Shown piece after piece: positions 2,501-37,256 of a stretch of 37,256 nt of DNA. The notes under the pieces are model-generated. The model was not told where the DNA came from and ran no database searches. It saw nothing but the letters and a program-made list of their open reading frames with translations. The position numbers and the translations under genes were made by a program. This DNA comes from Octopus bimaculoides. Its lineage: Eukaryota. The stretch lies in contig NC_068986.1 in the NCBI RefSeq assembly GCF_001194135.2, forward strand, positions 52,298,387-52,335,642, read 5' to 3'. Every line of letters begins with the position of its first letter. The stretch's first letter is position 1.

Positions 2501-3149
2501 CGTAGGGGAGAGGGAAGAGGAGGAGAACATTAACAACAAGGATAAGAACAACAATGTTCTATAGAGTACTATAGTTATTCACCGTAAAACTATTCACTAT
2601 AATTCCTAACAGAAGCCTGAGCAGTGGAATCTTGTTTGTGTGCAAAGAATAGTAGTTACGATGATAATGTAATAAAGCGAAATAAATAAATAAATGAATA
2701 AATAAATAACCAAACAAATAAATAAAAGTGAAAGCGAAAGTGAATGTACAGAGTAAAAATACACCTGACAAAAACGATACCGAAAATCGTGATTACATTT
2801 ATAATAACAACCCAAACTATAACGCAAAACGATGATAGCAGAAGTAATAACAACCACAATTACGATATCAAGAAGAACAAGAAGCAAAAGAATCTAGTAT
2901 TTGATAGGAATACAACTGAAAGTATACACATCTATGCTTTAGTTCAAAAGAAACAGGTTACATATATGTTTGTTTTGTTATTTGTTTTTCTGTTAGCTTT
3001 TCCTTTGTATATTTCAACTCTGAGTTGATAAAATAACGTAGATATAGAGGCTGTGGTGGAATTAGGAAAAAGGGAAAAAAATATTGAAGGAAAAGGCAAA
3101 AAAGGAATGATAGAAATTTGAGAGAAAAGAGTAATGAAGTAAAATATTC

Positions 3150-3610
3150 CTGAGAGTGAAAAGAAATGGAAAAGGTTTGAAGAAGAAGAAGAAACAGGAG
3201 GAGGAGAAGAAGAAGAAGAAACAGGAGGAGGAGAAGAAGAAGAAGAAGAAACAGGAGGAGGAGAAGAAGAAACAGGAGGAGGAGAAGAAGAAACAGGAGG
3301 AAGAGAAGAAGAAGAAGAAGAAGAAGAAGAAGAAGAAGAAGAAGAAGAAGAAGAAGAAGAAGAAGAAGAAGAAGAAGAAGGAGGAGAAGGAGGAGAAGGA
3401 AGAGAAGGAGGACGAGGACGAGGAGAAAGAGAAGAAAGAAAGAAACAGACAAACAAACAAACAAAGAAGGAATGAAAGGAAGAAACAAACAGACAAAACA
3501 AAGAAGGAAAGAATCAAAAAAGAAAGCAAGAAAGAATGAAAGGAAGAAACAAACAGACAAAACAAAGAAGGAAAGAATCAAAAAAGAAAGCAAGAAAGAA
3601 TGAAAGAAAA
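3150..3610. repeat. Purine-rich simple-repeat block: (GAA)n/(GGA)n, ~5 units of GAAGAAGAAACAGGAGGAG, and a perfect 64-bp tandem duplication (3470-3533 / 3534-3597)
   Basis: Direct reading. It explains the poly-K/E, poly-S/P and poly-L/F ORFs in the track. Confidence 0.95.
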
Positions 3611-4444
3611 GTTACTGGAAATGTTATTTCTGGTGAACAAGACGAGGAAGATGCTGCAAATGCTGACATTGGTGAAACGAAATTGTGTATGATATGTGAT
3701 AGCGAGGAAATATAGAATAAAAGAGCAAAATTATATATATCTGAAATGTAAACGAGAGTGACAGGAAGAAATACAAAAGAAAGTGTAATAAGGAATTTAA
3801 AAAAGAAGAAGGATAATGTGACAATTTTATTCTAGAGATAGAAAATATAAACACTTCAGAAGGAAGTGAGAGTTTATGAGGCAGAAAAAAACTATAAGCA
3901 ATTTGGAGTAACAGTACTTACAAGAACTATCTGTTCAAAAGATATCATTGGCACAGAAACATGAAAATTTTATATTTCTAACAATTGAAAGTACATTTAC
4001 ATATGTACTTTGGATATGACTACAGAATGTACGGTGGCTGGATATTGTGAATTTTCTGGCTAGATGAACACCATATATNNNNNNNNNNTGTGTGTGTGTG
4101 TGTGCGTGTGTGCGTGTGTGTGTGTTTGTGTAAAATGAAATATATGGCTGTATGAATATCATAAACGTTATGAATTGTATGATTATTTTATAGTGATGAG
4201 TTTTTGCGGCTGTGTGAGTAGTAAATAGGTCCTGATATAGTGTATTATAGTGTATTATATATTCATACACCCACCCACACACACATACATACGTCTATCT
4301 ACATATATGTATATGTATATATATGCATACACCTCTCCACACACACATACATACATACATCTATCTACATAACAACCCACTAACTATTCTACTCTACCTG
4401 TGTAAACTGTGGGCATTGTGGTATGATATTTACTGTGTATATTT

Positions 4445-10792: not shown

Positions 10793-12044
10793 CAGAGCTT
10801 GGACAAAATAATGGAAAGACCTTAAAATTTCAAACAAATTTATTTTAATATGGGGTAGGACCGCCTATGGCAGTAATTACAGCTTGAATTCTACGACGTA
10901 TGGACTCGTACAAAGTTTGAATTGTTTCCAAGGGAATATTTGTCTATTCTTCAGCTAAAACAGCCTCCAGTTCTTGTAGTGGTGATGATGGAGGATATCG
11001 ATTCCTTACTTGATTTTCTAAAATGCACTATAAATGTTCAATAATATTGAGATATAGGGACTGTGGTGGTCAGATAAGATGTTCAACTTCACTAGAATGT
11101 TCCTCATACCATTCAGTAACAACTTTAGCTGTTGAATTAGTGCATTAACGTCTCGAAAGATTGCGTTTCCCTCTGTAAACAGTTCCGCAACTATAGGATG
11201 AATTTGATCAGATAAAATGCTTAAATAGCCTTGACTATTAATTCTGCCATGAAGGGAAACCATTGGGCCGGCGGATTTCCAAGAGATAGTCTCCCAGATC
11301 ATCACAGATCCTCTTTTATGTCTAACAGTCGGAAGAAGGTAGTCTAGGTCAAAAGCTTCTTTTGGTTGTCTTCACACGTATACTCGGCCGGTGGTCGGAA
11401 ATAAGGTACAGGATGACTCGTTCGAGAAAATAACATTCTAGGGACCAATTCTGTAGGTTTTTACTCCACTCTACACGCTTTACAATGTTTATTTTTGAAA
11501 GTAGTGGTTTTCTGATTGCAGCTCTCATGTGAATTCCGTCTTTGTGCAGCTTCCGGCGAACGGTTTTCGTGGAAACTAGGTTCTGGAGGTGGTCATTAAT
11601 CTCTGCAGTAATTTTGGGAGCTATACTTTTGGGATCCTTTCTAACAATTCGTGTAAGAGTCCGACGTTTCCTATCTGAAAACTTTGGTTTCCTTCAGGAG
11701 TTTTGTTTCGTCGAGGAGGTTTTTCTCTCTTTCTCAAAGGCTATCTTTACTTTCGGGACAGAACTTCTTGATACAGCAACCATTTTGATTGTTTTCGTTA
11801 CGCTATGAACTGCCATACGAGCACCAACAATTTGACCGCTTTGAAATTCCGATAGATCTGTAATTTTAAGGAATTTTAATTACATTTTTCTGATGATAAC
11901 TGAAAAGAAACTGCACTTTTAACAAAGCATATAGAGCAACACCAATAGTAAATCATAAAACATAAAAATAAACAAACCTTTGACGATTTTATAGATATTT
12001 CAAAATTATGATGCTATGATGCTAGATATTTCCATTATTTTGTC
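10793..12044 (-). mobile_element. Tc1-family DNA transposon, essentially full length, transposase pseudogene (~10845-11864)
   Basis: Left end TA|CAGAGCTTGGACAAAATAATGGAAA. The matching inverted TTTCCATTATTTTGTC runs into the gap at 12044. Minus translation: TDLSEFQSGQIVGARM...AAIRKPLL...IFSNES...GSVMIW...IFRDVNA...PPQSPYLNIIEHL...GGPTPY* (DD34E-type), with stops and frameshifts. Confidence 0.9.
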
Positions 12045-12627
12045 NNNNNNNNNNNNNNNNNNNNNNNNNNNNNNNNNNNNNNNNNNNNNNNNNNNNNNNN
12101 NNNNNNNNNNNNNNNNNNNNNNNNNNNNNNNNNNNNNNNNNNNNNNNNNNNNNNNNNNNNNNNNNNNNNNNNNNNNNNNNNNNNNNNNNNNNNNNNNNNN
12201 NNNNNNNNNNNNNNNNNNNNNNNNNNNNNNNNNNNNNNNNNNNNNNNNNNNNNNNNNNNNNNNNNNNNNNNNNNNNNNNNNNNNNNNNNNNNNNNNNNNN
12301 NNNNNNNNNNNNNNNNNNNNNNNNNNNNNNNNNNNNNNNNNNNNNNNNNNNNNNNNNNNNNNNNNNNNNNNNNNNNNNNNNNNNNNNNNNNNNNNNNNNN
12401 NNNNNNNNNNNNNNNNNNNNNNNNNNNNNNNNNNNNNNNNNNNNNNNNNNNNNNNNNNNNNNNNNNNNNNNNNNNNNNNNNNNNNNNNNNNNNNNNNNNN
12501 NNNNNNNNNNNNNNNNNNNNNNNNNNNNNNNNNNNNNNNNNNNNNNNNNNNNNNNNNNNNNNNNNNNNNNNNNNNNNNNNNNNNNNNNNNNNNNNNNNNN
12601 NNNNNNNNNNNNNNNNNNNNNNNNNNN

Positions 12628-12808
12628 ATATATATATATATACACATATATGCACACACACATATGTTTATATATGTATGTACAAATATGTATGCCCATA
12701 TGTCGATATATATATATCTATAACATCCATCACACTCTCCTTCCGATACCCTCTGCATTTACTAATAGTAAAATCGTGCAATTGCAGACATACATACAGA
12801 CATATGTG

Positions 12809-12867
<59 letters not shown>

Positions 12868-12983
12868 CCGTGTGTGTGCGTGCGCGCGCGCGCGCGCGTG
12901 TGTGCGTGCGTGTGCGTCTGTGTGTATATGTACGTATGTATATAGATATATGTATATATACATATATCTACATAGATACGTAT

Positions 12984-13016
<33 letters not shown>

Positions 13017-13028: not shown

Positions 13029-13434
13029 ATCCAAATTTAGGGAATGGATCAGACAAATTCCAAACTATATATGTTTCCTGGCTAGCGACAGCTTGGAAAT
13101 AGTAATTACTCCACGAGGAGTTCTCCATTAGCTACTCATCAAGCAGAAGATAATTTAGTTAAATGAAGGTTACCATATATCCTAGATTTTGCCTGCTTTA
13201 TTCCCTCAATTTGGATTTTTATCCGCATACATAGCAACCCTAGTTGCTAGCCATGAACTATAGAATAACTTTTTTCAGCTTATCTAACTTCGATATGGAC
13301 AAAATTTACAACCTTCTACGCCAATAAAGCACTATTATTCCTGAAAGTTTTTTAATACCTTCTACAGACTGCTCGAAACTCACTAACTTCTAACTCACTA
13401 ACTTGTGCACTTGGTTCTTACGTTCACATACCAT

Positions 13435-13962
13435 GGCTGGTCCTGTCAAATGGCTAGAAGATGATAGAGGTTCAATTCTCTGCTTGCAATATATGTCGGG
13501 TGCAGATTGCATCGATAAGTAACTAGAGGAGACCTCCACTGGGGTTAAAAATGGTAGTAACCTTGTTTCGTATGGAACAGTCAGGTTGAAGTGTCGACAA
13601 ATATTACTTCTCTGTTTAGTTACTACTTACATCACTTAGAGTGATAATTGTCACTTAGTGTTCTATATATTACGTGATGGATCGAACTACTGCTATCTCT
13701 AGCGGGCAGGTGTCCAGTACTGGGGATGAGTAAAAGTAGCCCGAAACCTGACGGTCTGCTGCTCCAGTCAAATAGGAAGAAGATGGTAGAAGGGTTCGTT
13801 TCTCAAGCTTGTAATATATGTCGGGTGTAGATTGGATCGATAATCAGACAGAGGAAGCTTCCTCTTGGGGTTACAAATGTTAGTAACGTATTCATACGGA
13901 ACAGCTATGTTGAAGTGCCGTCAAACATTACTTCTCAGTACAGTTACTACTTTCATCACTTA
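13435..13962 (+). mobile_element. Candidate non-LTR retrozyme: one 322-nt monomer (13435-13756) plus a partial second copy (13757-~13962)
   Basis: 13436-13640 and 13758-13962 align colinearly (offset 322, roughly 75% identity by eye). A hammerhead core lies at the junction and homology starts at the cleavage site. The monomer is highly self-complementary. Confidence 0.75.
13706..13769 (+). ncRNA. Type I hammerhead ribozyme (slightly mutated genomic copy)
   Basis: Stem I 5' CAGUA (13715-19). Core CUGGGGA (13720-26; canonical CUGANGA with A6>G). Stem II U-GAGUAAAAGUAGCCC. GAAA (13743-46). Stem III ACC/UGAC/GGU. Cleavage triplet GUC ending at C13756. Stem I 3' UGCUG (13757-61). Confidence 0.75.
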
Positions 13963-14325
13963 TAGAAATTTTCTATCTACCTACTTTGCTTGTTTTATAT
14001 AAATATATATGATAATTTAACGCAAGTAATCGCATATATGCTATACATGAACATTAACAAGATTCATTCTTTACAACGACATATTTTGCAGTCATGGGTC
14101 CGCACTCCAAATAATGTTTGATTAGTTGTAAAGCGCTATCAGTGAGAAACACCTCGCTTAGTCCAAGTATAACGTGTGTGGTTCATAGGTATCACTTTGG
14201 GAAAGAAACGCACCGACAGATGCGCACGGGCATGCATAGATCATGCACAAACACACACAATCACATTAACACGCAAACACATAATTCTGAATGAAGATAC
14301 ACACATACTTGTATGTATATATATA

Positions 14326-14387
<62 letters not shown>

Positions 14388-17620: not shown

Positions 17621-17831
17621 ACGTCGTTTCTTTATATATATGCGTGTGTGTGTGCGTTTGTATTTGTAATTTAAATTGGTAAGTACTTCATACGCACACA
17701 AAGCATTTTAGGGTGTTTTCGTATATATCTAGTGCTTCTACAATCATGACATAGAAAATCTGGAGTGATAACTTAGTCATTGCACGGTGAGCGACATAAC
17801 GTTAAGCTTATATAAAAATGCCATATATATA

Positions 17832-17914
<83 letters not shown>

Positions 17915-18804
17915 NNNNNNNNNNNNNNNNNNNNNNNNNNNNNNNNNNNNNNNNNNNNNNNNNNNNNNNNNNNNNNNNNNNNNNNNNNNNNNNNNNNNNN
18001 NNNNNNNNNNNNNNNNNNNNNNNNNNNNNNNNNNNNNNNNNNNNNNNNNNNNNNNNNNNNNNNNNNNNNNNNNNNNNNNNNNNNNNNNNNNNNNNNNNNN
18101 NNNNNNNNNNNNNNNNNNNNNNNNNNNNNNNNNNNNNNNNNNNNNNNNNNNNNNNNNNNNNNNNNNNNNNNNNNNNNNNNNNNNNNNNNNNNNNNNNNNN
18201 NNNNNNNNNNNNNNNNNNNNNNNNNNNNNNNNNNNNNNNNNNNNNNNNNNNNNNNNNNNNNNNNNNNNNNNNNNNNNNNNNNNNNNNNNNNNNNNNNNNN
18301 NNNNNNNNNNNNNNNNNNNNNNNNNNNNNNNNNNNNNNNNNNNNNNNNNNNNNNNNNNNNNNNNNNNNNNNNNNNNNNNNNNNNNNNNNNNNNNNNNNNN
18401 NNNNNNNNNNNNNNNNNNNNNNNNNNNNNNNNNNNNNNNNNNNNNNNNNNNNNNNNNNNNNNNNNNNNNNNNNNNNNNNNNNNNNNNNNNNNNNNNNNNN
18501 NNNNNNNNNNNNNNNNNNNNNNNNNNNNNNNNNNNNNNNNNNNNNNNNNNNNNNNNNNNNNNNNNNNNNNNNNNNNNNNNNNNNNNNNNNNNNNNNNNNN
18601 NNNNNNNNNNNNNNNNNNNNNNNNNNNNNNNNNNNNNNNNNNNNNNNNNNNNNNNNNNNNNNNNNNNNNNNNNNNNNNNNNNNNNNNNNNNNNNNNNNNN
18701 NNNNNNNNNNNNNNNNNNNNNNNNNNNNNNNNNNNNNNNNNNNNNNNNNNNNNNNNNNNNNNNNNNNNNNNNNNNNNNNNNNNNNNNNNNNNNNNNNNNN
18801 NNNN

Positions 18805-18835
<31 letters not shown>

Positions 18836-19349
18836 TATTCTATATATATTATACCCACACACATACACACATAGAAACACACAGATTCACAGAGTTGTTT
18901 GTGCTCGCAAGGAATGAAGGGACACCGAAAAGTAATTGGTATATCTTTCTGCATGAAGCGCCAGAGTTGAATGACTAACTCGAGCTTGCGGCAATTTGGA
19001 AATTGGCGAGGTGTTCGTGACTGTATGCGATGACATTCAATTCTCTTCTCTATGTGTAGAATTCTAGTTTTACCTTAAGCTTACATATCTATCCTCCGTT
19101 CGATAAAATGAACAAAGCAACAGTATTGCACGATGTAATGAATGCTTGTTGCATGTTGTGTGAGAGTAGGGGTCCGTTAGTAGGGGAGGAACATGGATGA
19201 AATATTAGTAGCTATATCATTTCAAATAAATGATAGGAATTAACGAAGACTGAAACTTGCCTATGTAGATATGAGCATACAGACATGAGGACTCACAATA
19301 TATATTTGTGTGTGTAGGTGTGTATACATACATATATATGCATGTCTGA

Positions 19350-20359: not shown

Positions 20360-21635
20360 CGAGGGAGATTCAAAAATTATATGCACTCTTGATTATTCAA
20401 TGTATTTACACAAAAGCAAAAGATCAACAAGTACGTCATTTTTCTAGATGGTCTCCTTCCATTTCGATTCACTGTGTCCAACGGTCTACAAGCTTGCGCA
20501 TTCCCTACAAGATTTTCAGTTGGTCGTGCAACCACTTATGCATGGCTTACTTCACATCTTCATCCATTGGAAACCATCTTTGAGCGGTCTATAAATATGA
20601 TAGTCGGAATGGGAAAGATCTGGGCTGTAAGCAGGGTGTTCCAGCTCCTCAAAACCAAATTGGTTAATGGTTTCAACGGTCTGGGGGGGGGGCGTGTGTG
20701 CGTGCATTGTCATGCAACAACAAAACTTCTTTCGACAGTAGGCTTCGGCGTTTGGGTGCGAATTGACTGGCTTCAGTTTGTTTGCTAGCAAAGCACTGTA
20801 TCTTGCACTGTTCATCGTACACCACTTTTCCAGGTAGTCTTCCAGTATAAACCCATTTGAGTCCCAAAATAGGGTTAGAATCACCTTTATCGCAGAAAAC
20901 GGATTCTTGAATTTCTTCGTCGCTAGCGAGCCAGAATGTTTTCACTCCATACTCTGTCCGTTGGATTCTGCCTCATAATTATGGACCCACGCTTCATCTC
21001 GTGTGACTATTCTGCTCAAACATTCCTCGCCTGCATTGTTATAGCGATCGAGTAAACGACTCCAATACGTTTGTGTTTGTGCTTTGCAGGTAGCACTTTT
21101 GGCACTCATCTTGCAGGGGACTTTCTGGAAGCCGAGCTCACCATGGGTGATTTGATAGGCAGAAACATGACTAATCTGCAGTGAACGAGCTACTTCATCG
21201 ATGATATCTACTTGGTTCACCACTACCATCTCTCGAGCTTCCTGAATCTTCTTGTCAGTGGTGAAAGTTAACAGGCGCCGTGATCCCTCTTCGTGTGTTA
21301 CACTTGTCCGGCCTCTTTTAAACTTCTTGATCCACTTATACACACTTCTGCGCGGTAGTTCGCTGTCCCCGTATGGTGCTAAAAGCCTCCGATGAATTTC
21401 AACTACTGACATATTTTCCGACCAGAGAAATCGATTCACTGTTATTTACTCTCTTGGGTGCACATTGCTAGTGGAGCGGCCATGTTTACACTGTGAAGCC
21501 AGAAGGAAAAATGGCGCGATGAGGCTGAAACTTCGATCACGCGACCACAATATAAGCATGCATGCACATAAGGCCGTGTGACAACAATAAAGATATGTTA
21601 TGGCGAATGTGCCGATCATTTTTGGCTTACCCTAG
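20360..21635 (-). mobile_element. mariner (DD34D) DNA transposon, full length, transposase pseudogene (~20436-21483)
   Basis: TA|CGAGGGAGATTCAAAAATTATATGCAC on the left and inverted GTGCCGATCATTTTTGGCTTACCCTAG|TA on the right. Track ORFs give the HTH, IVTRDEAWVHNY, LLLHDNARTH and HPAYSPDLSHSDY motifs. Confidence 0.92.
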
Positions 21636-26764: not shown

Positions 26765-27870
26765 GCGCCACCGTGGTTTTGCACAATTACTATTTCCTCA
26801 TGCTGGGGGAGGGCATCTCACCATCACTCCTAGGTGCCTTTGCTCCAACTGTTTGGCCATTTGGTACATGAGGGAGTTTGTTTCTGCTTCCCTCATCTGC
26901 ACCTCATGCTGAGCTGTCGATTCATCCGATATTGTGGTAAGGAGAATGTCTAGTTCGTTTTTGAAGACATCTACGTCTATATTATGTAGGTTTCTTAATT
27001 TTTGTGGCAGAGTATTGAAGAGTAGTAGGCCTTTGAACCCTATGCTACAGTGGCGTCCAATCCTGACATTTGTATAACATTGAATGCCGAAATTAGGTAC
27101 TAGCCCTTTTAGAGTATTCCATATCTAGATTATTATATATCTGTCGCGCCTTGCCTCCAGGGAGTAAAATCATAGTTGTTTCAGCCTCTCCCTAGAGCTC
27201 ATGCGGTGCACTGGTTTAGTCCTTTTGTTGTGCTGGCGCTAGACTGCTTCAAGCTTCCCTGTTAGCTTGACACTATGTGGTGAACATAGCTGAGAGCAGT
27301 AGTCAAGACGGCTGAGAACAAAGTTCCTTCACATGGTCAGCATAACATCTTAATCTCTTGTCTTGGAGGATCGTATTATCCACCCTGCCAGTTATCTGCA
27401 CTTTGCTGTCATCTTGCTAATGTGCACATGAAATGATGCATCATTGCACATACAGATCCCCAAGTCTTTCAGTGTTTGAGACACTGGGATTGCAGTGCTA
27501 TTCGCTCCTGTATATGTAAGCCGCGGTGCATTTGTGAGTTGATAGTGCAGTGCTTGAAATTTTCCAACTTGTAAGCTTGTGATATCATCTGGACATTTTT
27601 ATTGCCAGCGATAATTTTGTATCATCGGAGTAGCAAGTGACAATGGTTGTCTGTGTGTACATGGACATGTCTAAGAGGGCTATTGTAAATAGTAATTGTC
27701 CCAAGACAGTTCCCTGAGAGACATCACTTCGAACTTGAGCTTCCTCAGAAAGGGCACTGTTGACCGCAACTGCCTAACTTCTGTCCTTAGGGAAAACATG
27801 CAGCCACTCTCCCAGTTTACCAGCAATTCCAATGTTTCGGAGCTTGTGACATATCGTGCTATGATCTACT
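26765..27870 (-). mobile_element. CR1-type LINE, 3' ~1.1 kb (RT core to 3' UTR), decayed
   Basis: Minus: ICHKLRNIGIAGKLGEWL...DVSQGTVLGQLLF...CYSDDTK..., followed by thumb and C-terminal region remnants. Confidence 0.85.
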
Positions 27871-28861: not shown

Positions 28862-30052
28862 CACACATGCAGTAAGTAAATAGACTCCTTTAATTTTCAA
28901 AACCTTTTATTTAATATGCAAAGCGAACAATTGAAATGTAACCGATAGGTAGGACTGCATACTTTAGTATTTAGTTGACATTCCCTTTGCAGTTTCTAAT
29001 TCAGAAACTCTTTTTGGCATTGAACTGATGAGTTTTGAGATTGTCTCTTGTGGAATTTCTGCCCAATTTTCACGCAGCAATCGAAACAATTCATCTTTAG
29101 ATTTAGGTTTCTGTCGAGTTTTTCGTATTGCTCTATCTAGTATGCACCAAAAATTTTTAATAAGGTTCATGTCAGGAGATTGGCTCGGTCAAGAAAACTT
29201 TTTGGTCCTATTATCAGTTAGCCATTGTTGATTCCTTTTTGCTGTGTAGCATGGAGCCCCATCTTCCATGAATAAAAAGTCATTTTTCGTTGTTATCGTG
29301 TGAATACATTGGAAGTAGTCCTTGTTTAAGTATTTCGATATATTTTTCAGAGTTTATGGTTCCAACACATTCGATCAGCTCAGAACGACCGTTGCTGGTG
29401 ACAGCTCCCCTTACCGTTCCAGAGATACGGCCATGTTTCACAGTTGATTGGAGTCGTTTCAAATCAAATTCTTGATTGGGTAGCCTCTAGACCCAAACAC
29501 GTCCACTGTCTGAAAATAATGCATATCTGGATTTATCTCAGAAAATCACTCTATCCCAAAAGGAACTGGATTTTTCTGACATATCCTTAGCCCATTTCTT
29601 TCTTTTCGTGATATTAATTGGTTGAAGGAGAGATTTTCTTCTAGCTGCTCGTCCATAATACTTAAGCTTATGCAGATGTGTAACACACGTTCTTTGACTA
29701 ACTTCTAGCTGTTTTTCAATGTCAGAAGCTTTCGGACGGGGTTCGTTTTCCACATTTCTCTTCATACAGCGAAGCTTCCTTTCCAAGAGGAATTTGAAGA
29801 TTTTGGGCAATTTTTTGCTGGCTAAGACCAGCCGCAGATTGCCCAACAATACAACCTCTTTGGAAATCTGACAGTTCTGCTGAATTTTCTGTGCGTGGCA
29901 TGGTTACACTTCGCAGAAGTTTAATATAATGGCACCTGGAATGAAAAAGAATGATTGCATTTTAAATTCTACACCGCTGAAAACATATTAAGACGGTAGA
30001 TCAGAAATTTTGAAAATTGAAGGTGACTATATACATACATCCTGCATGTCTG
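28862..30052 (-). mobile_element. Tc1-family DNA transposon, full length, transposase pseudogene (~28964-29901)
   Basis: Degenerate TIRs CACACATGCAGTAAGTAAATAGACTCCTTTAATTTTCAAAA and TTTTGAAAATTGAAGGTGACTATATACATACATCCTGCATGTCTG|TA. Translation: [20 protein letters not shown]...AARRKSLL...VIFSE...VKHG...MEDGAP...PSQSPDMNLIKNFW...GMSTKY*. Confidence 0.9.
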
Positions 30053-35565: not shown

Positions 35566-36945
35566 CAGGGTAAGGCCAATACTCAAGACAGAGCTGAATG
35601 CAACAAACAGGATCGAAGCAATCAATACTTTAACCATACCGCTCGTGACTTATAGTTTCAAAACCATTAACTGGTCAGTTTCTGAAATATGTAATCTTGA
35701 CTGAAAAATACGAGAATTGTTGACAATGCATTGAATGTACCACCCTAAGAATGACTTTACCTGTCAAAAAAAAGCGTGTGGCCGTGGACATTTACAACTG
35801 GAATTAACGATGAAGCTTGCCACAATTGGCTTCGACACCTACCTGAAAAACTCTGATGACTGGATGTTAAAACTTGTCTAAAAGCACGAAAGCAAGACAG
35901 CATCATACTCAGTAACAAAAGAGGCAAAATGAATTCCAAATCGAAGTGAATTCCAAATAAGGCAAATACCAGAATTAGACGTACTAGAAACAAATGCAGA
36001 AAAAGCTAAGCGTATGAAAACCCATGCTAAAATGTTGCTGCCTTAAATACTCTTACTTATAAATGGCGAGAAAAACCTATCAATGACATATACCCAAAGA
36101 GAGAAATAGTGCACATGTTGACAAAGCCCTTATCCATCAATGGTTAGTGTACTCTGGCTTAAAAACAGAAGCAAAAGGGTTTATCATCGCAGCCCAAGAT
36201 CAATGCCTACCTATAGGGAACTGCCAGGCTCACATATTAAAGAACGGCAGTAGCTCAACATGTCTTGTATGTAAACAACAAAATGAAACCATTGATCATG
36301 TTATCTCCATGTGTATCTCAACAGGCATGATAGAGCAGCACAGTATATTCTCTGGGCAATTTGAAAAAAAACCTGGACCTGCTCCATGATAAAAACTGGT
36401 GGGAACACACAACACCTCCAGTGCTTGAAAATGATCACATCTCACTCTTCTGGAACTTCACCATTCAAACTGACAGATATAATGCCTCTTCATTGATATG
36501 ACTGTCCCAACCCGCATAAATGTATCTGTGAAGATCAACCAAAAACTGAGCAAGTATAAAGATCTTGAAATAGATATTGGCAAAATATGGAACCTCAAGA
36601 CTAAAACAATACCTGTTTTCATAGGTGCCCTAGGAGTGATAGCAAAAAGGGGATGATTCCTACCTAGCTCAGATACCAGGAAGCTCCAAAATGGAAGAAA
36701 TTCAAAAGATGGTGCTCATGGGAACTGCCCATATCCAACGTAAAATACTGTGTACGTAAGCTCAAATTTTAAAACAAACTCATAATTTTCTTATGTCTTG
36801 TTAAATATTCTCTAAAACAATACTATGTACAAAACTAAATTTATGACACCCTAGACATAACACCAACAACTTCTAACTTGTTTCTCTTGAGATCTCTGGT
36901 TGAGACTTGGAACCAACTTGTACAAATACAAAGCAAAGGTCAAAC

Positions 36946-36948
<3 letters not shown>
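35561..36948 (+). mobile_element. 5'-truncated R4/Dong-clade element (subfamily 1), RT thumb to 3' end, decayed
   Basis: YRRVRPILKTELNATNRIEAINTLTIPLVTYSF...W; GFIIAAQDQCL; CLVCKQQNETIDHVISMC (CCHC); YLNRHD; LFWNFTIQTD; KLSKYKDLEIDI..W..KTIPVFIGALG; MVLMGTAHIQRKIL. Ends in (TAA)n. Confidence 0.88.

Positions 36949-37013
<65 letters not shown>
36949..37013. repeat. (TAA)n tract between two R4-type elements
   Basis: Direct reading of the sequence. Confidence 0.95.
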
Positions 37014-37256
37014 GTCAATGAACTAGATAGGATACAACATACACAAATGAAAGAAAAAATAAAGAAAGAGTACTATAGACGAGTTAGATCAATACTAAAA
37101 ACAGAGCTCAATGCTAAAAACAAGATAATGGGTATCAACACTTTAGCTGTCCCAGTTATAAGCTACAGCTACAACATCCTTAACTGGACACTAAACGAAC
37201 TATGTAAAATAGACAGGAAAGCAAGAAAAATAATGACAGGATATAGGATGCACCAC
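37014..37256 (+). mobile_element. 5'-truncated R4/Dong-clade element running off the window, with an open frame
   Basis: 81 codons without a stop: VNELDRIQHTQMKEKIKKEYYRRVRSILKTELNAKNKIMGINTLAVPVISYSYNILNWTLNELCKIDRKARKIMTGYRMHH (post-YKYLG RT thumb). Confidence 0.85.

What the first reader, a model, noticed from the sequence alone, without database searches (positions are those of the whole stretch)
13435..13962. Candidate cephalopod non-LTR retrozyme: 322-nt hammerhead-bounded, rod-folding monomer inserted as a ~1.6-mer
Seen: two colinear copies offset by 322 nt, with a type I hammerhead between them (core 13720-26, GAAA 13743-46, stem III ACC/UGAC/GGU, GUC ending at 13756). Homology between the copies begins at 13436/13758, within 1 nt of the predicted cut, and the 5 nt upstream share nothing. 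The start of copy 1 (GCUGG-U-CCUGUC) pairs with the pre-core strand (GGCAGG-UGU-CCAGUA) to give a two-part stem I with an internal loop. Pairing continues as CUAGC/GCUAG, CUAUC/GAUAG, GAACU/GGUUC, AUAUAUUAC/GCAAUAUAU and AGUAACU/AGUUACU, so the two ends of the monomer zip into a long rod if circularised. Known: metazoan non-LTR retrozymes are ~170-400-nt tandem units with type I hammerheads that yield circular RNAs and have no ORF. An extra residue between A9 and G10.1 occurs in some natural hammerheads. Inference: this is a decayed insertion of such an element whose 5' end was set by self-cleavage, mobilised in trans by a PLE or LINE RT. I cannot tell whether this family is already catalogued. 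This copy has A6>G and a stem II mismatch, so it is probably inactive itself.
Basis: partly seen in the sequence, partly recalled or inferred. Interest (0 to 1): 0.9.

Follow-up and report, generated by a model that had tools for sequence, protein, structure and literature searches.

The report
Decayed octopus hammerhead retrozyme copy
This is a dead, one-and-a-half-unit copy of a several-hundred-copy octopus repeat family whose units are separated by a hammerhead self-cutting RNA motif, a known kind of non-coding mobile element (a non-LTR retrozyme) apparently not yet described in cephalopods.

Summary
Two colinear copies (79% identical, offset 322-325 nt) are separated by a type I hammerhead at 13720-13756, and repeat homology starts at 13436/13758, 1 nt from the predicted cut.

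Two corrections:
- Copy 2 runs to about 13994, not 13962.
- Copy 1 lacks 39 nt that the family has, so the family unit is about 361 nt.

- The family has hundreds of copies.
- Its majority letters restore A6 (13723 G>A, 87/101 reads).
- They also restore helix II: 13729 A>G and 13731 U>C give GGGC/GCCC.
- They strengthen a 52-position helix that zips the unit's two ends (45 to 49 pairs).
- Other copies carry the same short-period hammerhead-to-unit-start junction.
- Three other organism labels share the family, with A6 in 94-100% of contig depth.

No RT or GIY-YIG ORF lies in the window. The window maps to assembly GCA_001194135.2, an octopus.

Not shown: self-cleavage, circular RNA, which reverse transcriptase moves it, or a family-wide pile-up of 5' ends at the cut. 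RNA libraries show only weak, fragmentary signal. Rfam does not detect this hammerhead type.

Verdict: new member of a known kind; this copy is inactive.

The parts
13436..13757 (+). Copy 1 of the unit (322 nt), running from the position just after one predicted cut to U1.1 just after the next. It carries a 39-nt internal deletion relative to the family, between 13641 and 13642.
   Evidence: Deletion inferred from loose-end consensus strings and the contig joint 13994 -> GCGAGATCAGTGACTGG -> 13648.
13758..13994 (+). Copy 2, 3'-truncated (about 237 of about 361 nt). It ends inside the segment that copy 1 has lost. Closer to the family consensus than copy 1 over 13919-13994.
   Evidence: Family depth continues to about 13996, with majority changes at 13958, 13967, 13976 and 13980.
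13705..13719 (+). Hammerhead helix I, 5' strand (GGCAGG-UGU-CCAGUA): two 6-bp parts around an internal loop.
   Evidence: Family change 13706 G>A turns a U.G pair into U-A.
13720..13726 (+). Core C3-A9, CUGGGGA in this copy. Position 13723 is A6 mutated to G.
   Evidence: 13723 G>A in 87 of 101 reads of the same organism and in 94-100% of contig depth in three other organism labels.
13727..13727 (+). Extra unpaired U between A9 and G10.1, conserved in the family as U or A.
   Evidence: Loose-end strings ...CTGAGGATGGGC......A GGG CAAATA CCC. The same bulge is described as usual in PLE hammerheads (PMC4209133).
13728..13742 (+). Helix II plus loop 2: GAGU/AAAAGUA/GCCC here (one mismatch, one wobble); GGGC/AAAAAUA/GCCC in the family majority.
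   Evidence: 13729 A>G 34/55, 13731 T>C 31/44, 13736 G>A 34/40.
13743..13756 (+). G12 A13 A14, helix III (ACC-UGAC-GGU) and C17. The predicted cut lies between 13756 and 13757. A major subfamily has the palindromic ACC-GUAC-GGU.
   Evidence: Loose ends GAAACCGTACGGTCT|GG (agreement 0.92, 11 contigs). No alternative letter reaches 40% at the other core positions.
13436..13447 (+). Helix I, 3' strand (GCUGG-U-CCUGUC) as carried by copy 1. It pairs fully with 13705-13718. The copy 2 equivalent (13758-13769) has two mismatches.
   Evidence: The junction construct folds into a three-way junction.
13436..13495 (+). Left arm of the long end-to-end helix (pairs with 13664-13718).
   Evidence: 45/52 pairs in the window copy and 49/52 (44 Watson-Crick) with family majority letters; slid controls 15-24/52.
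13664..13719 (+). Right arm of the long end-to-end helix, continuous with helix I of the hammerhead.
   Evidence: Majority changes 13672 A>G, 13675 T>A, 13677 A>C and 13682 T>G (with 13475 A>C) restore or keep pairs.

Best explanation
13436-13994 is an old, inactive insertion of about 1.5 units of a non-coding, tandem-forming repeat family of an octopus genome (assembly GCA_001194135.2). Each unit (about 361 nt in the family, 322 nt in copy 1 after a deletion) ends in a type I hammerhead ribozyme. By sequence architecture the family fits the metazoan non-LTR retrozymes.

Inferred mechanism, by analogy with published retrozymes:
1. Tandem copies are transcribed.
2. The hammerhead cuts after GUC. 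It may act as a dimer, through the palindromic helix III.
3. This releases unit-length RNA with 5'-OH and 2',3'-cyclic phosphate ends. The ends are held together by the long helix that continues helix I.
4. A host RNA ligase can circularise this RNA.
5. A reverse transcriptase supplied in trans copies linear or circular RNA into the genome. A Penelope-like element (PLE) is the likeliest source, because the hammerhead carries the PLE-typical bulged nucleotide.

In this copy the 5' edge lies 1 nt from the cut site. That fits a template whose 5' end was made by self-cleavage. The 3' edge is internal to the unit.

Shown here: the repeat, the motif, the family, the consensus repairs, the helix, the tandem junctions elsewhere and the absence of ORFs. 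Inferred: cleavage, circles, the RT and the origin of the 5' end.
For: - Repeat and motif coordinates.
- Multi-copy family. Raw DNA reads give depth 0 on the unique flank 14036-14190 and up to about 270 on the element. Contig word depth divided by the unique depth (14.4) gives about 500 copy equivalents at 13490-13528, about 840 at 13919-13957 and about 80 at 13685-13723.
- Majority letters repair the ribozyme: A6 87/101, G10.2 34/55, C10.4 31/44. Variant subfamilies all read CUGAGGA-(U/A)-GGG..CCC-GAAAC.
- Majority letters improve the helix I / end-to-end helix from 45 to 49 of 52 pairs. This includes a double change, A-U to C-G, at 13475/13682. The junction-domain MFE goes from -40.6 to -60.5 kcal/mol.
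- Other copies are tandem with the same short period. The unit start is preceded by GAAACC-GUAC-GGUC^U. 'Goes back' joints span 230-292 nt in the same organism and in other organism labels.
- The family, with A6, is shared by organisms B, C and D.
- No ORF above 49 aa in the element. No RT or GIY-YIG in the Pfam-scanned long ORFs of the window, only Tc1/mariner relics.
- GC is 41%, within the <45% given for metazoan retrozymes (PMC7229834).
- The bulged nucleotide is the usual PLE-hammerhead trait (PMC4209133). The identical core plus helix II base occurs in 68 contigs carrying PLE-type minimal hammerheads.
Against: - Rfam finds no hammerhead here, even at E<=10. This carries little weight, because Rfam also misses the intact-core PLE-type hammerheads in L001-L055.
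- The whole-unit fold is only z=-1.7 against shuffles.
- No RNA evidence for abundant unit-length or circular RNA. Family signal in three cDNA runs and four RNA contig sets is weak and mostly consists of fragments embedded in longer transcripts. The library types may exclude circles.
- No family-wide pile-up of 5' ends at the cut site was seen.
- Depth over the hammerhead core is far lower than over two conserved boxes (about 15 vs 500-840 copy equivalents). Many family members may therefore have diverged or lost ribozymes. Contigs with the core partly deleted exist (table 5c).
Confidence: 0.78

Rival explanations
1. It is a fragment of the terminal repeat (pLTR) of a Penelope-like element: a truncated autonomous element, not a separate non-autonomous retrozyme family.
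For: The bulged nucleotide 5' of helix II is typical of PLE hammerheads. The core and helix II base are identical to PLE-type minimal hammerheads in 68 unrelated contigs. A 2026 preprint finds vertebrate retrozymes to be sister to PLE pLTRs. PLE insertions are often partial tandems.
Against: The tandem period here is 322-361 nt with no ORF between hammerheads. Other copies show the same short-period junction. No RT or GIY-YIG was found in the window. Helix I (6+6 bp), helix II (4 bp) and helix III (3 bp plus tetraloop) follow the canonical metazoan type I layout, not the PLE minimal layout. I could not retrieve an octopus PLE to compare pLTR sequences.
Confidence: 0.12
2. It is a relic of a satellite or segmental tandem duplication that spread by DNA-level mechanisms. 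The hammerhead is a fossil that plays no part in its spread.
For: No RNA evidence of processing. Most copies are under 90% alike, so the family is old. Depth over the ribozyme is much lower than over two conserved boxes. No target-site duplication is visible at 13435/13995.
Against: The locus is a dispersed, isolated 1.5-mer whose left edge sits 1 nt from the cut site. By my own estimate, the chance of that for a random edge is about 3/322, or 1%. The family majority keeps every core position and both ribozyme helices across at least four organism labels. That pattern points to past selection on the RNA.
Confidence: 0.07
3. The hammerhead-like motif is a chance match inside an ordinary local duplication.
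For: A descriptor loose enough to accept this copy hits in 4% of simulated windows. Rfam gives no hit.
Against: Family majority letters repair exactly the two defects. Independent subfamilies carry intact cores. The motif sits at the unit boundary.
Confidence: 0.02

Closest known systems
Metazoan non-LTR retrozymes (Cervera & de la Pena 2020, NAR; coral, mussel, axolotl)
   Same: Short (150-450 bp) tandem units, low GC, no ORF, a type I hammerhead at the unit boundary, a self-paired unit, many genomic copies, and co-occurrence with PLE-type hammerheads.
   Different: No cleavage or circRNA evidence here, and only weak RNA signal. The hammerhead has an extra nucleotide between A9 and G10.1. I found no description of a cephalopod family in the held literature.
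Minimal hammerheads of Penelope-like element terminal repeats (Cervera & de la Pena 2014, MBE)
   Same: CUGAGGA core with a bulged nucleotide 5' of helix II. The 12+10 nt around helix II are identical to those of 68 contigs with PLE-type minimal hammerheads.
   Different: Here helix I is long (6+6 bp), helix II is only 4 bp, and helix III is 3 bp plus a tetraloop. The units repeat every ~322-361 nt with no RT/GIY-YIG ORF.
Newt satellite 2 and Schistosoma Sm-alpha hammerhead repeats
   Same: Dispersed or tandem ~330-nt non-coding repeats with type I hammerheads whose short palindromic helix III favours dimeric cleavage (background).
   Different: No sequence homology was tested or expected. Those families have experimental cleavage and transcripts; this one has none.
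CChMVd (+) hammerhead with an extra residue between A9 and G10.1 (De la Pena & Flores 2001, as cited in PMC4209133)
   Same: An extra unpaired nucleotide at the same core position.
   Different: That one belongs to a plant viroid, has a type III layout, and is an infectious RNA rather than a genomic repeat.
Plant LTR retrozymes (Cervera et al. 2016)
   Same: Non-autonomous, hammerhead-bounded, circRNA-forming retroelements.
   Different: The plant elements have type III hammerheads inside LTRs, plus PBS/PPT, about 700 nt between ribozymes, and high GC. None of these applies here.

Membership tests
Metazoan non-LTR retrozyme | Type I hammerhead with an intact catalytic core (CUGANGA...GAAA...UH) | tested here: met
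   Met at family level: majority letters give CUGAGGA, GAAA and GUC, and no alternative reaches 40% at other core positions. Not met in this copy (A6>G at 13723).
Metazoan non-LTR retrozyme | Short head-to-tail tandem units (about 150-450 bp) bounded by the hammerhead | tested here: met
   Offset is 322-325 nt here, and the family unit is about 361 nt. Elsewhere, tandem junctions show as hammerhead-to-unit-start loose ends and 'goes back' joints of 230-292 nt.
Metazoan non-LTR retrozyme | Many dispersed genomic copies | tested here: met
   About 80-840 copy equivalents depending on the segment, at >=80% likeness.
Metazoan non-LTR retrozyme | No coding capacity; low GC (<45%) | tested here: met
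   Longest ORF is 49 aa. GC is 41-42%.
Metazoan non-LTR retrozyme | Highly self-paired unit RNA | tested here: inconclusive
   A 52-position terminal helix is supported by family changes. The whole-unit MFE is only z=-1.7 and is branched in the middle.
Metazoan non-LTR retrozyme | Self-cleavage of the transcript | not testable with these tools
   Needs in vitro transcription of a consensus monomer and dimer.
Metazoan non-LTR retrozyme | Expression as unit-length linear and circular RNA | tested here: inconclusive
   cDNA runs X20-22 and RNA contig sets X25, X26, X28 and X31 show weak, mostly fragmentary family signal. One low-depth tandem-junction contig was seen. The libraries probably do not capture circles.
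Rfam hammerhead families | A covariance-model match | tested here: not met
   No hit at the gathering score or at E<=10. The models also miss intact PLE-type hammerheads, so this says little.
PLE terminal repeat (pLTR) | Repeats flank an RT plus GIY-YIG ORF (units about 3 kb apart) | tested here: not met
   No such ORF in the window. The period is 322-361 nt.
PLE terminal repeat (pLTR) | Minimal hammerhead: bulged nucleotide 5' of helix II, long helix II (6-8 bp), short helix I (4-5 bp), almost no helix III | tested here: not met
   Only the bulged nucleotide is present. Helix II is 4 bp, helix I is 6+6 bp, and helix III is 3 bp plus a tetraloop.
Canonical metazoan type I hammerhead | Helix I about 6 bp, helix II about 4 bp, short helix III with a small palindromic loop | tested here: met
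   Family majority: helix I 6 bp then an internal loop; helix II GGGC/GCCC; helix III ACC-GUAC-GGU, which is palindromic. Loop-loop tertiary contacts were not assessed.

The most novel reading that the evidence does not exclude
The family is a cephalopod-wide lineage of retrozymes whose hammerhead is intermediate between canonical retrozyme hammerheads and PLE minimal hammerheads: canonical helices plus the PLE bulge. This copy, with its 5' edge at the cut site and an internal 3' edge, would then record reverse transcription of a self-cleaved linear multimer rather than of a circle. That would give a genomic read-out of the template form used in retrozyme mobilisation and a molluscan link between PLE repeats and retrozymes.
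Probability: 0.15. Interest if true: 0.5.

Novelty: new member of a known kind. Interest (0 to 1): 0.3.

Why it matters
It adds a cephalopod family to the non-LTR retrozymes. Its hammerhead mixes canonical and Penelope-type traits, which fits the recent proposal that animal retrozymes derive from Penelope-like element repeats. It also shows that the Rfam models miss this hammerhead type, so genome annotations under-count it. The single locus is a dead copy with no expected function of its own. Its value is as a pointer to the family, and to a genome-wide test of whether copy ends mark self-cleavage.

Tried and rejected
- Rfam at the gathering score over the whole window, and at E<=10 over 13300-14100: no hammerhead, only chance snoRNA-like matches.
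- Tandem Repeats Finder does not report the 322-nt repeat, because 1.6 copies at 79% fall below its score threshold.
- A search for other copies in the window found none.
- I tried to see what lies before 13436 in relatives using raw reads on a 95-nt stretch. Too few reads aligned, and the loose ends were hidden. Contig runs then gave the answer.
- I tried to obtain a PLE RT query from the 68 metagenome loci. There are no RT-like ORFs upstream of their hammerheads, only mariner-type transposase fragments and low-complexity ORFs. The octopus PLE pLTR comparison was therefore abandoned.
- The viral contig collection has no match to the hammerhead pattern.
- I considered fishing for other genomic copies through short ORFs of the element. 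I dropped this because the ORFs are at most 49 aa and poorly conserved.
- No tRNA-like part was found, so there is no tRNA-derived SINE head in or beside the element.
- No target-site duplication is visible by eye at 13435/13995.

Full report
**1. What is in the sequence**

- CTGGGGA at 13720-13726.
- An extra T at 13727.
- GAGT/AAAAGTA/GCCC at 13728-13742.
- GAAA at 13743-13746.
- ACC-TGAC-GGT at 13746-13755.
- C at 13756.

The segment 13436-13757 matches 13758-13965 at 79% identity over 210 nt (E=1.5e-44). It matches nothing else in the window. Homology begins at 13436/13758, and the five bases before each start share nothing.

A hammerhead descriptor relaxed enough to accept this decayed copy finds one site in the window, this one. 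It finds 0.048 sites per simulated window. The motif alone is therefore only modest evidence.

**2. Source and surroundings**

A protein encoded in the window maps to assembly GCA_001194135.2, record CM046606.1 (117 Mb), near 52.3 Mb. Its best named relatives are Octopus bimaculoides and O. sinensis proteins. From memory, that accession is the O. bimaculoides assembly, so the 'cephalopod' label is supported.

The window has seven N gaps and Tc1/mariner transposase relics. None of the long ORFs scanned carries an RT or GIY-YIG domain. The element itself has no ORF above 49 aa. Its GC content is 41%.

**3. The family**

Public DNA reads of the same organism were laid on the locus at >=80% likeness.
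- Depth is 0 on the unique flank 14036-14190 and up to about 270 on the element.
- With assembled contigs, I divided summed word depth by the unique depth (14.4). This gives about 500 copy equivalents at 13490-13528, about 840 at 13919-13957, about 80 at 13685-13723 and about 15 over the ribozyme core.
- The profile is uneven because this copy is locally diverged and the family is heterogeneous. Variants with internal deletions, some removing part of the core, are seen.
- Family reads stop exactly at 13436 on the left.
- On the right they run to about 13994 and then continue GCAAGATCAGTGAC..GTCACTTGT. That is the same string that precedes 13661 in other copies. One contig joins 13994 to 13648 through GCGAGATCAGTGACTGG.

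So copy 2 ends at about 13994, copy 1 has lost 39 nt between 13641 and 13642, and the family unit is about 361 nt.

**4. The predicted repairs**

It does:

| Position | Change | Support | Effect |
|---|---|---|---|
| 13723 | G>A | 87/101 reads | restores A6 |
| 13729 | A>G | 34/55 | repairs the helix II mismatch |
| 13731 | T>C | 31/44 | turns U.G into C-G |
| 13736 | G>A | 34/40 | loop 2 change |

- Helix II in the family majority is GGGC/AAAAAUA/GCCC.
- No other core position has an alternative letter at 40% or more.
- Subfamilies seen as loose ends all read CUGAGGA-(U/A)-GGG..CCC-(U)GAAAC.
- Upstream of the unit start, relatives read GAAACC-GUAC-GGUC^U, with agreement 0.92 over 11 contigs. 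This gives a palindromic helix III, ACCGUACGGU, the form associated with dimeric cleavage in tandem repeats (PMC4209133).
- Three other organism labels carry the family with the same majority letters. A6 accounts for 189/202, 1789/1839 and 2426/2426 units of contig depth.

**5. Secondary structure**

Helix I (6 bp, internal loop, 6 bp) continues into a long helix between 13436-13495 and 13664-13718.
- The window copy forms 45 of 52 pairs.
- With family majority letters it forms 49 of 52, of which 44 are Watson-Crick.
- Sliding the partner strand by 1-3 nt gives only 15-24 of 52.
- The majority changes include a double change, A-U to C-G, at 13475/13682.
- Single changes that restore or strengthen pairs occur at 13464, 13477, 13495, 13672, 13675, 13677 and 13706.
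- The junction domain goes from -40.6 to -60.5 kcal/mol with the majority letters.

The whole unit is not clearly more stable than shuffles: circular MFE is -88.0 against -79.1 +/- 5.4, z=-1.7. The middle is branched.

**6. Retrozyme or Penelope repeat**

The bulged nucleotide between A9 and G10.1 is described as the usual trait of hammerheads in Penelope-like element (PLE) repeats. A pattern built from the octopus majority letters (CTGAGGATGGGC N5-9 GCCCGAAACC) hits 68 metagenome contigs. These carry PLE-type minimal hammerheads:
- helix I GCUC/GAGC;
- helix II GGGCG/CGCCC;
- almost no helix III;
- some in inverted pairs.

They share no other homology with the octopus unit and have no RT ORF nearby. 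Rfam detects none of them. This explains why Rfam is silent on the window.

The octopus hammerhead otherwise has canonical metazoan proportions, and its units repeat every 322-361 nt with no ORF. By architecture it is a non-LTR retrozyme (PMC7229834). The PLE-like bulge fits the recent proposal that animal retrozymes derive from PLE repeats.

**7. What is not shown**

- The unit start in most relatives is preceded by another hammerhead, so I saw no family-wide pile-up of 5' ends at the cut. The coincidence in this copy is a single observation. By my own estimate it has about a 1% chance for a random edge.
- Three cDNA runs have no reads of 99% likeness or more on this locus, and only one read of 95% or more among them. 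Family depth in these runs is low.
- Four RNA contig sets show mostly fragments embedded in longer transcripts, plus one low-depth tandem-junction contig. These libraries probably miss circles, so the RNA question stays open.
- Self-cleavage, circularisation and the mobilising RT are inferences from the published families.

**8. Literature**

The held library describes retrozymes in corals, mussels, axolotl and many vertebrates. It records 235 Rfam Hammerhead_1 loci in the giant squid genome, without further analysis. No paper describing a cephalopod retrozyme family was found.

**Verdict**

This is a new member of a known kind. The locus itself is a dead copy.

Noticed in passing
window 13139-13411: An unrelated multi-copy repeat lies directly upstream (about 60-350 copy equivalents). 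It is better represented in RNA-seq than the retrozyme and ends with a 13-nt direct repeat, AACTCACTAACTT x2, at 13377-13404. About 25 nt of unique sequence separate it from the retrozyme. Its type is unknown, and no tRNA-like part was found.
   Followed up: partly
window 12809-13008 and 14312-14387: (TA)n, (TG)n and (AC)n microsatellites lie about 400 nt to either side of the insertion and form long imperfect inverted arms. PLEs are reported to prefer microsatellite targets, but the insertion is not inside either one.
   Followed up: no
L001-L068 (JGI metagenome contigs): 68 host-like contigs carry a PLE-type minimal hammerhead whose core and helix II base are identical to the octopus family majority. 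It usually sits in a conserved ~100-nt element followed by AATAAA. Four contigs have inverted pairs 89 or 164 nt apart. Rfam detects none of them. From memory the contig prefixes look like termite-gut projects; I did not verify this.
   Followed up: partly
window 13919-13986: In RNA runs X20, X21, X22 and X31, a family fragment ending at 13986 is followed by the same string, AGATGTACTTCCCTATTCTTGTACCCATTA (agreement 0.96-1.0). One particular expressed transcript therefore contains a piece of this family.
   Followed up: no
window 20555-21445 (-), 11021-11693 (-), 29541-29903 (-): Decayed Tc1/mariner transposase fragments (HTH_48, Transposase_1 and HTH_Tnp_Tc3_2 hits).
   Followed up: partly
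window 36891-37256 (+) and 26801-27124 (-): ORF fragments that by eye resemble C-terminal parts of LINE reverse transcriptases. No Pfam match, so this is unconfirmed.
   Followed up: partly
window 2947-3611: A long low-complexity tract translates as poly-L/S/F on one strand and poly-E/K/R on the other. It is a trinucleotide-type simple repeat, not a gene.
   Followed up: no
window 2015-28090: Seven runs of N (10 to 890 nt) create artificial long ORFs in all frames, for example 12006-12758 and 17773-18978.
   Followed up: yes
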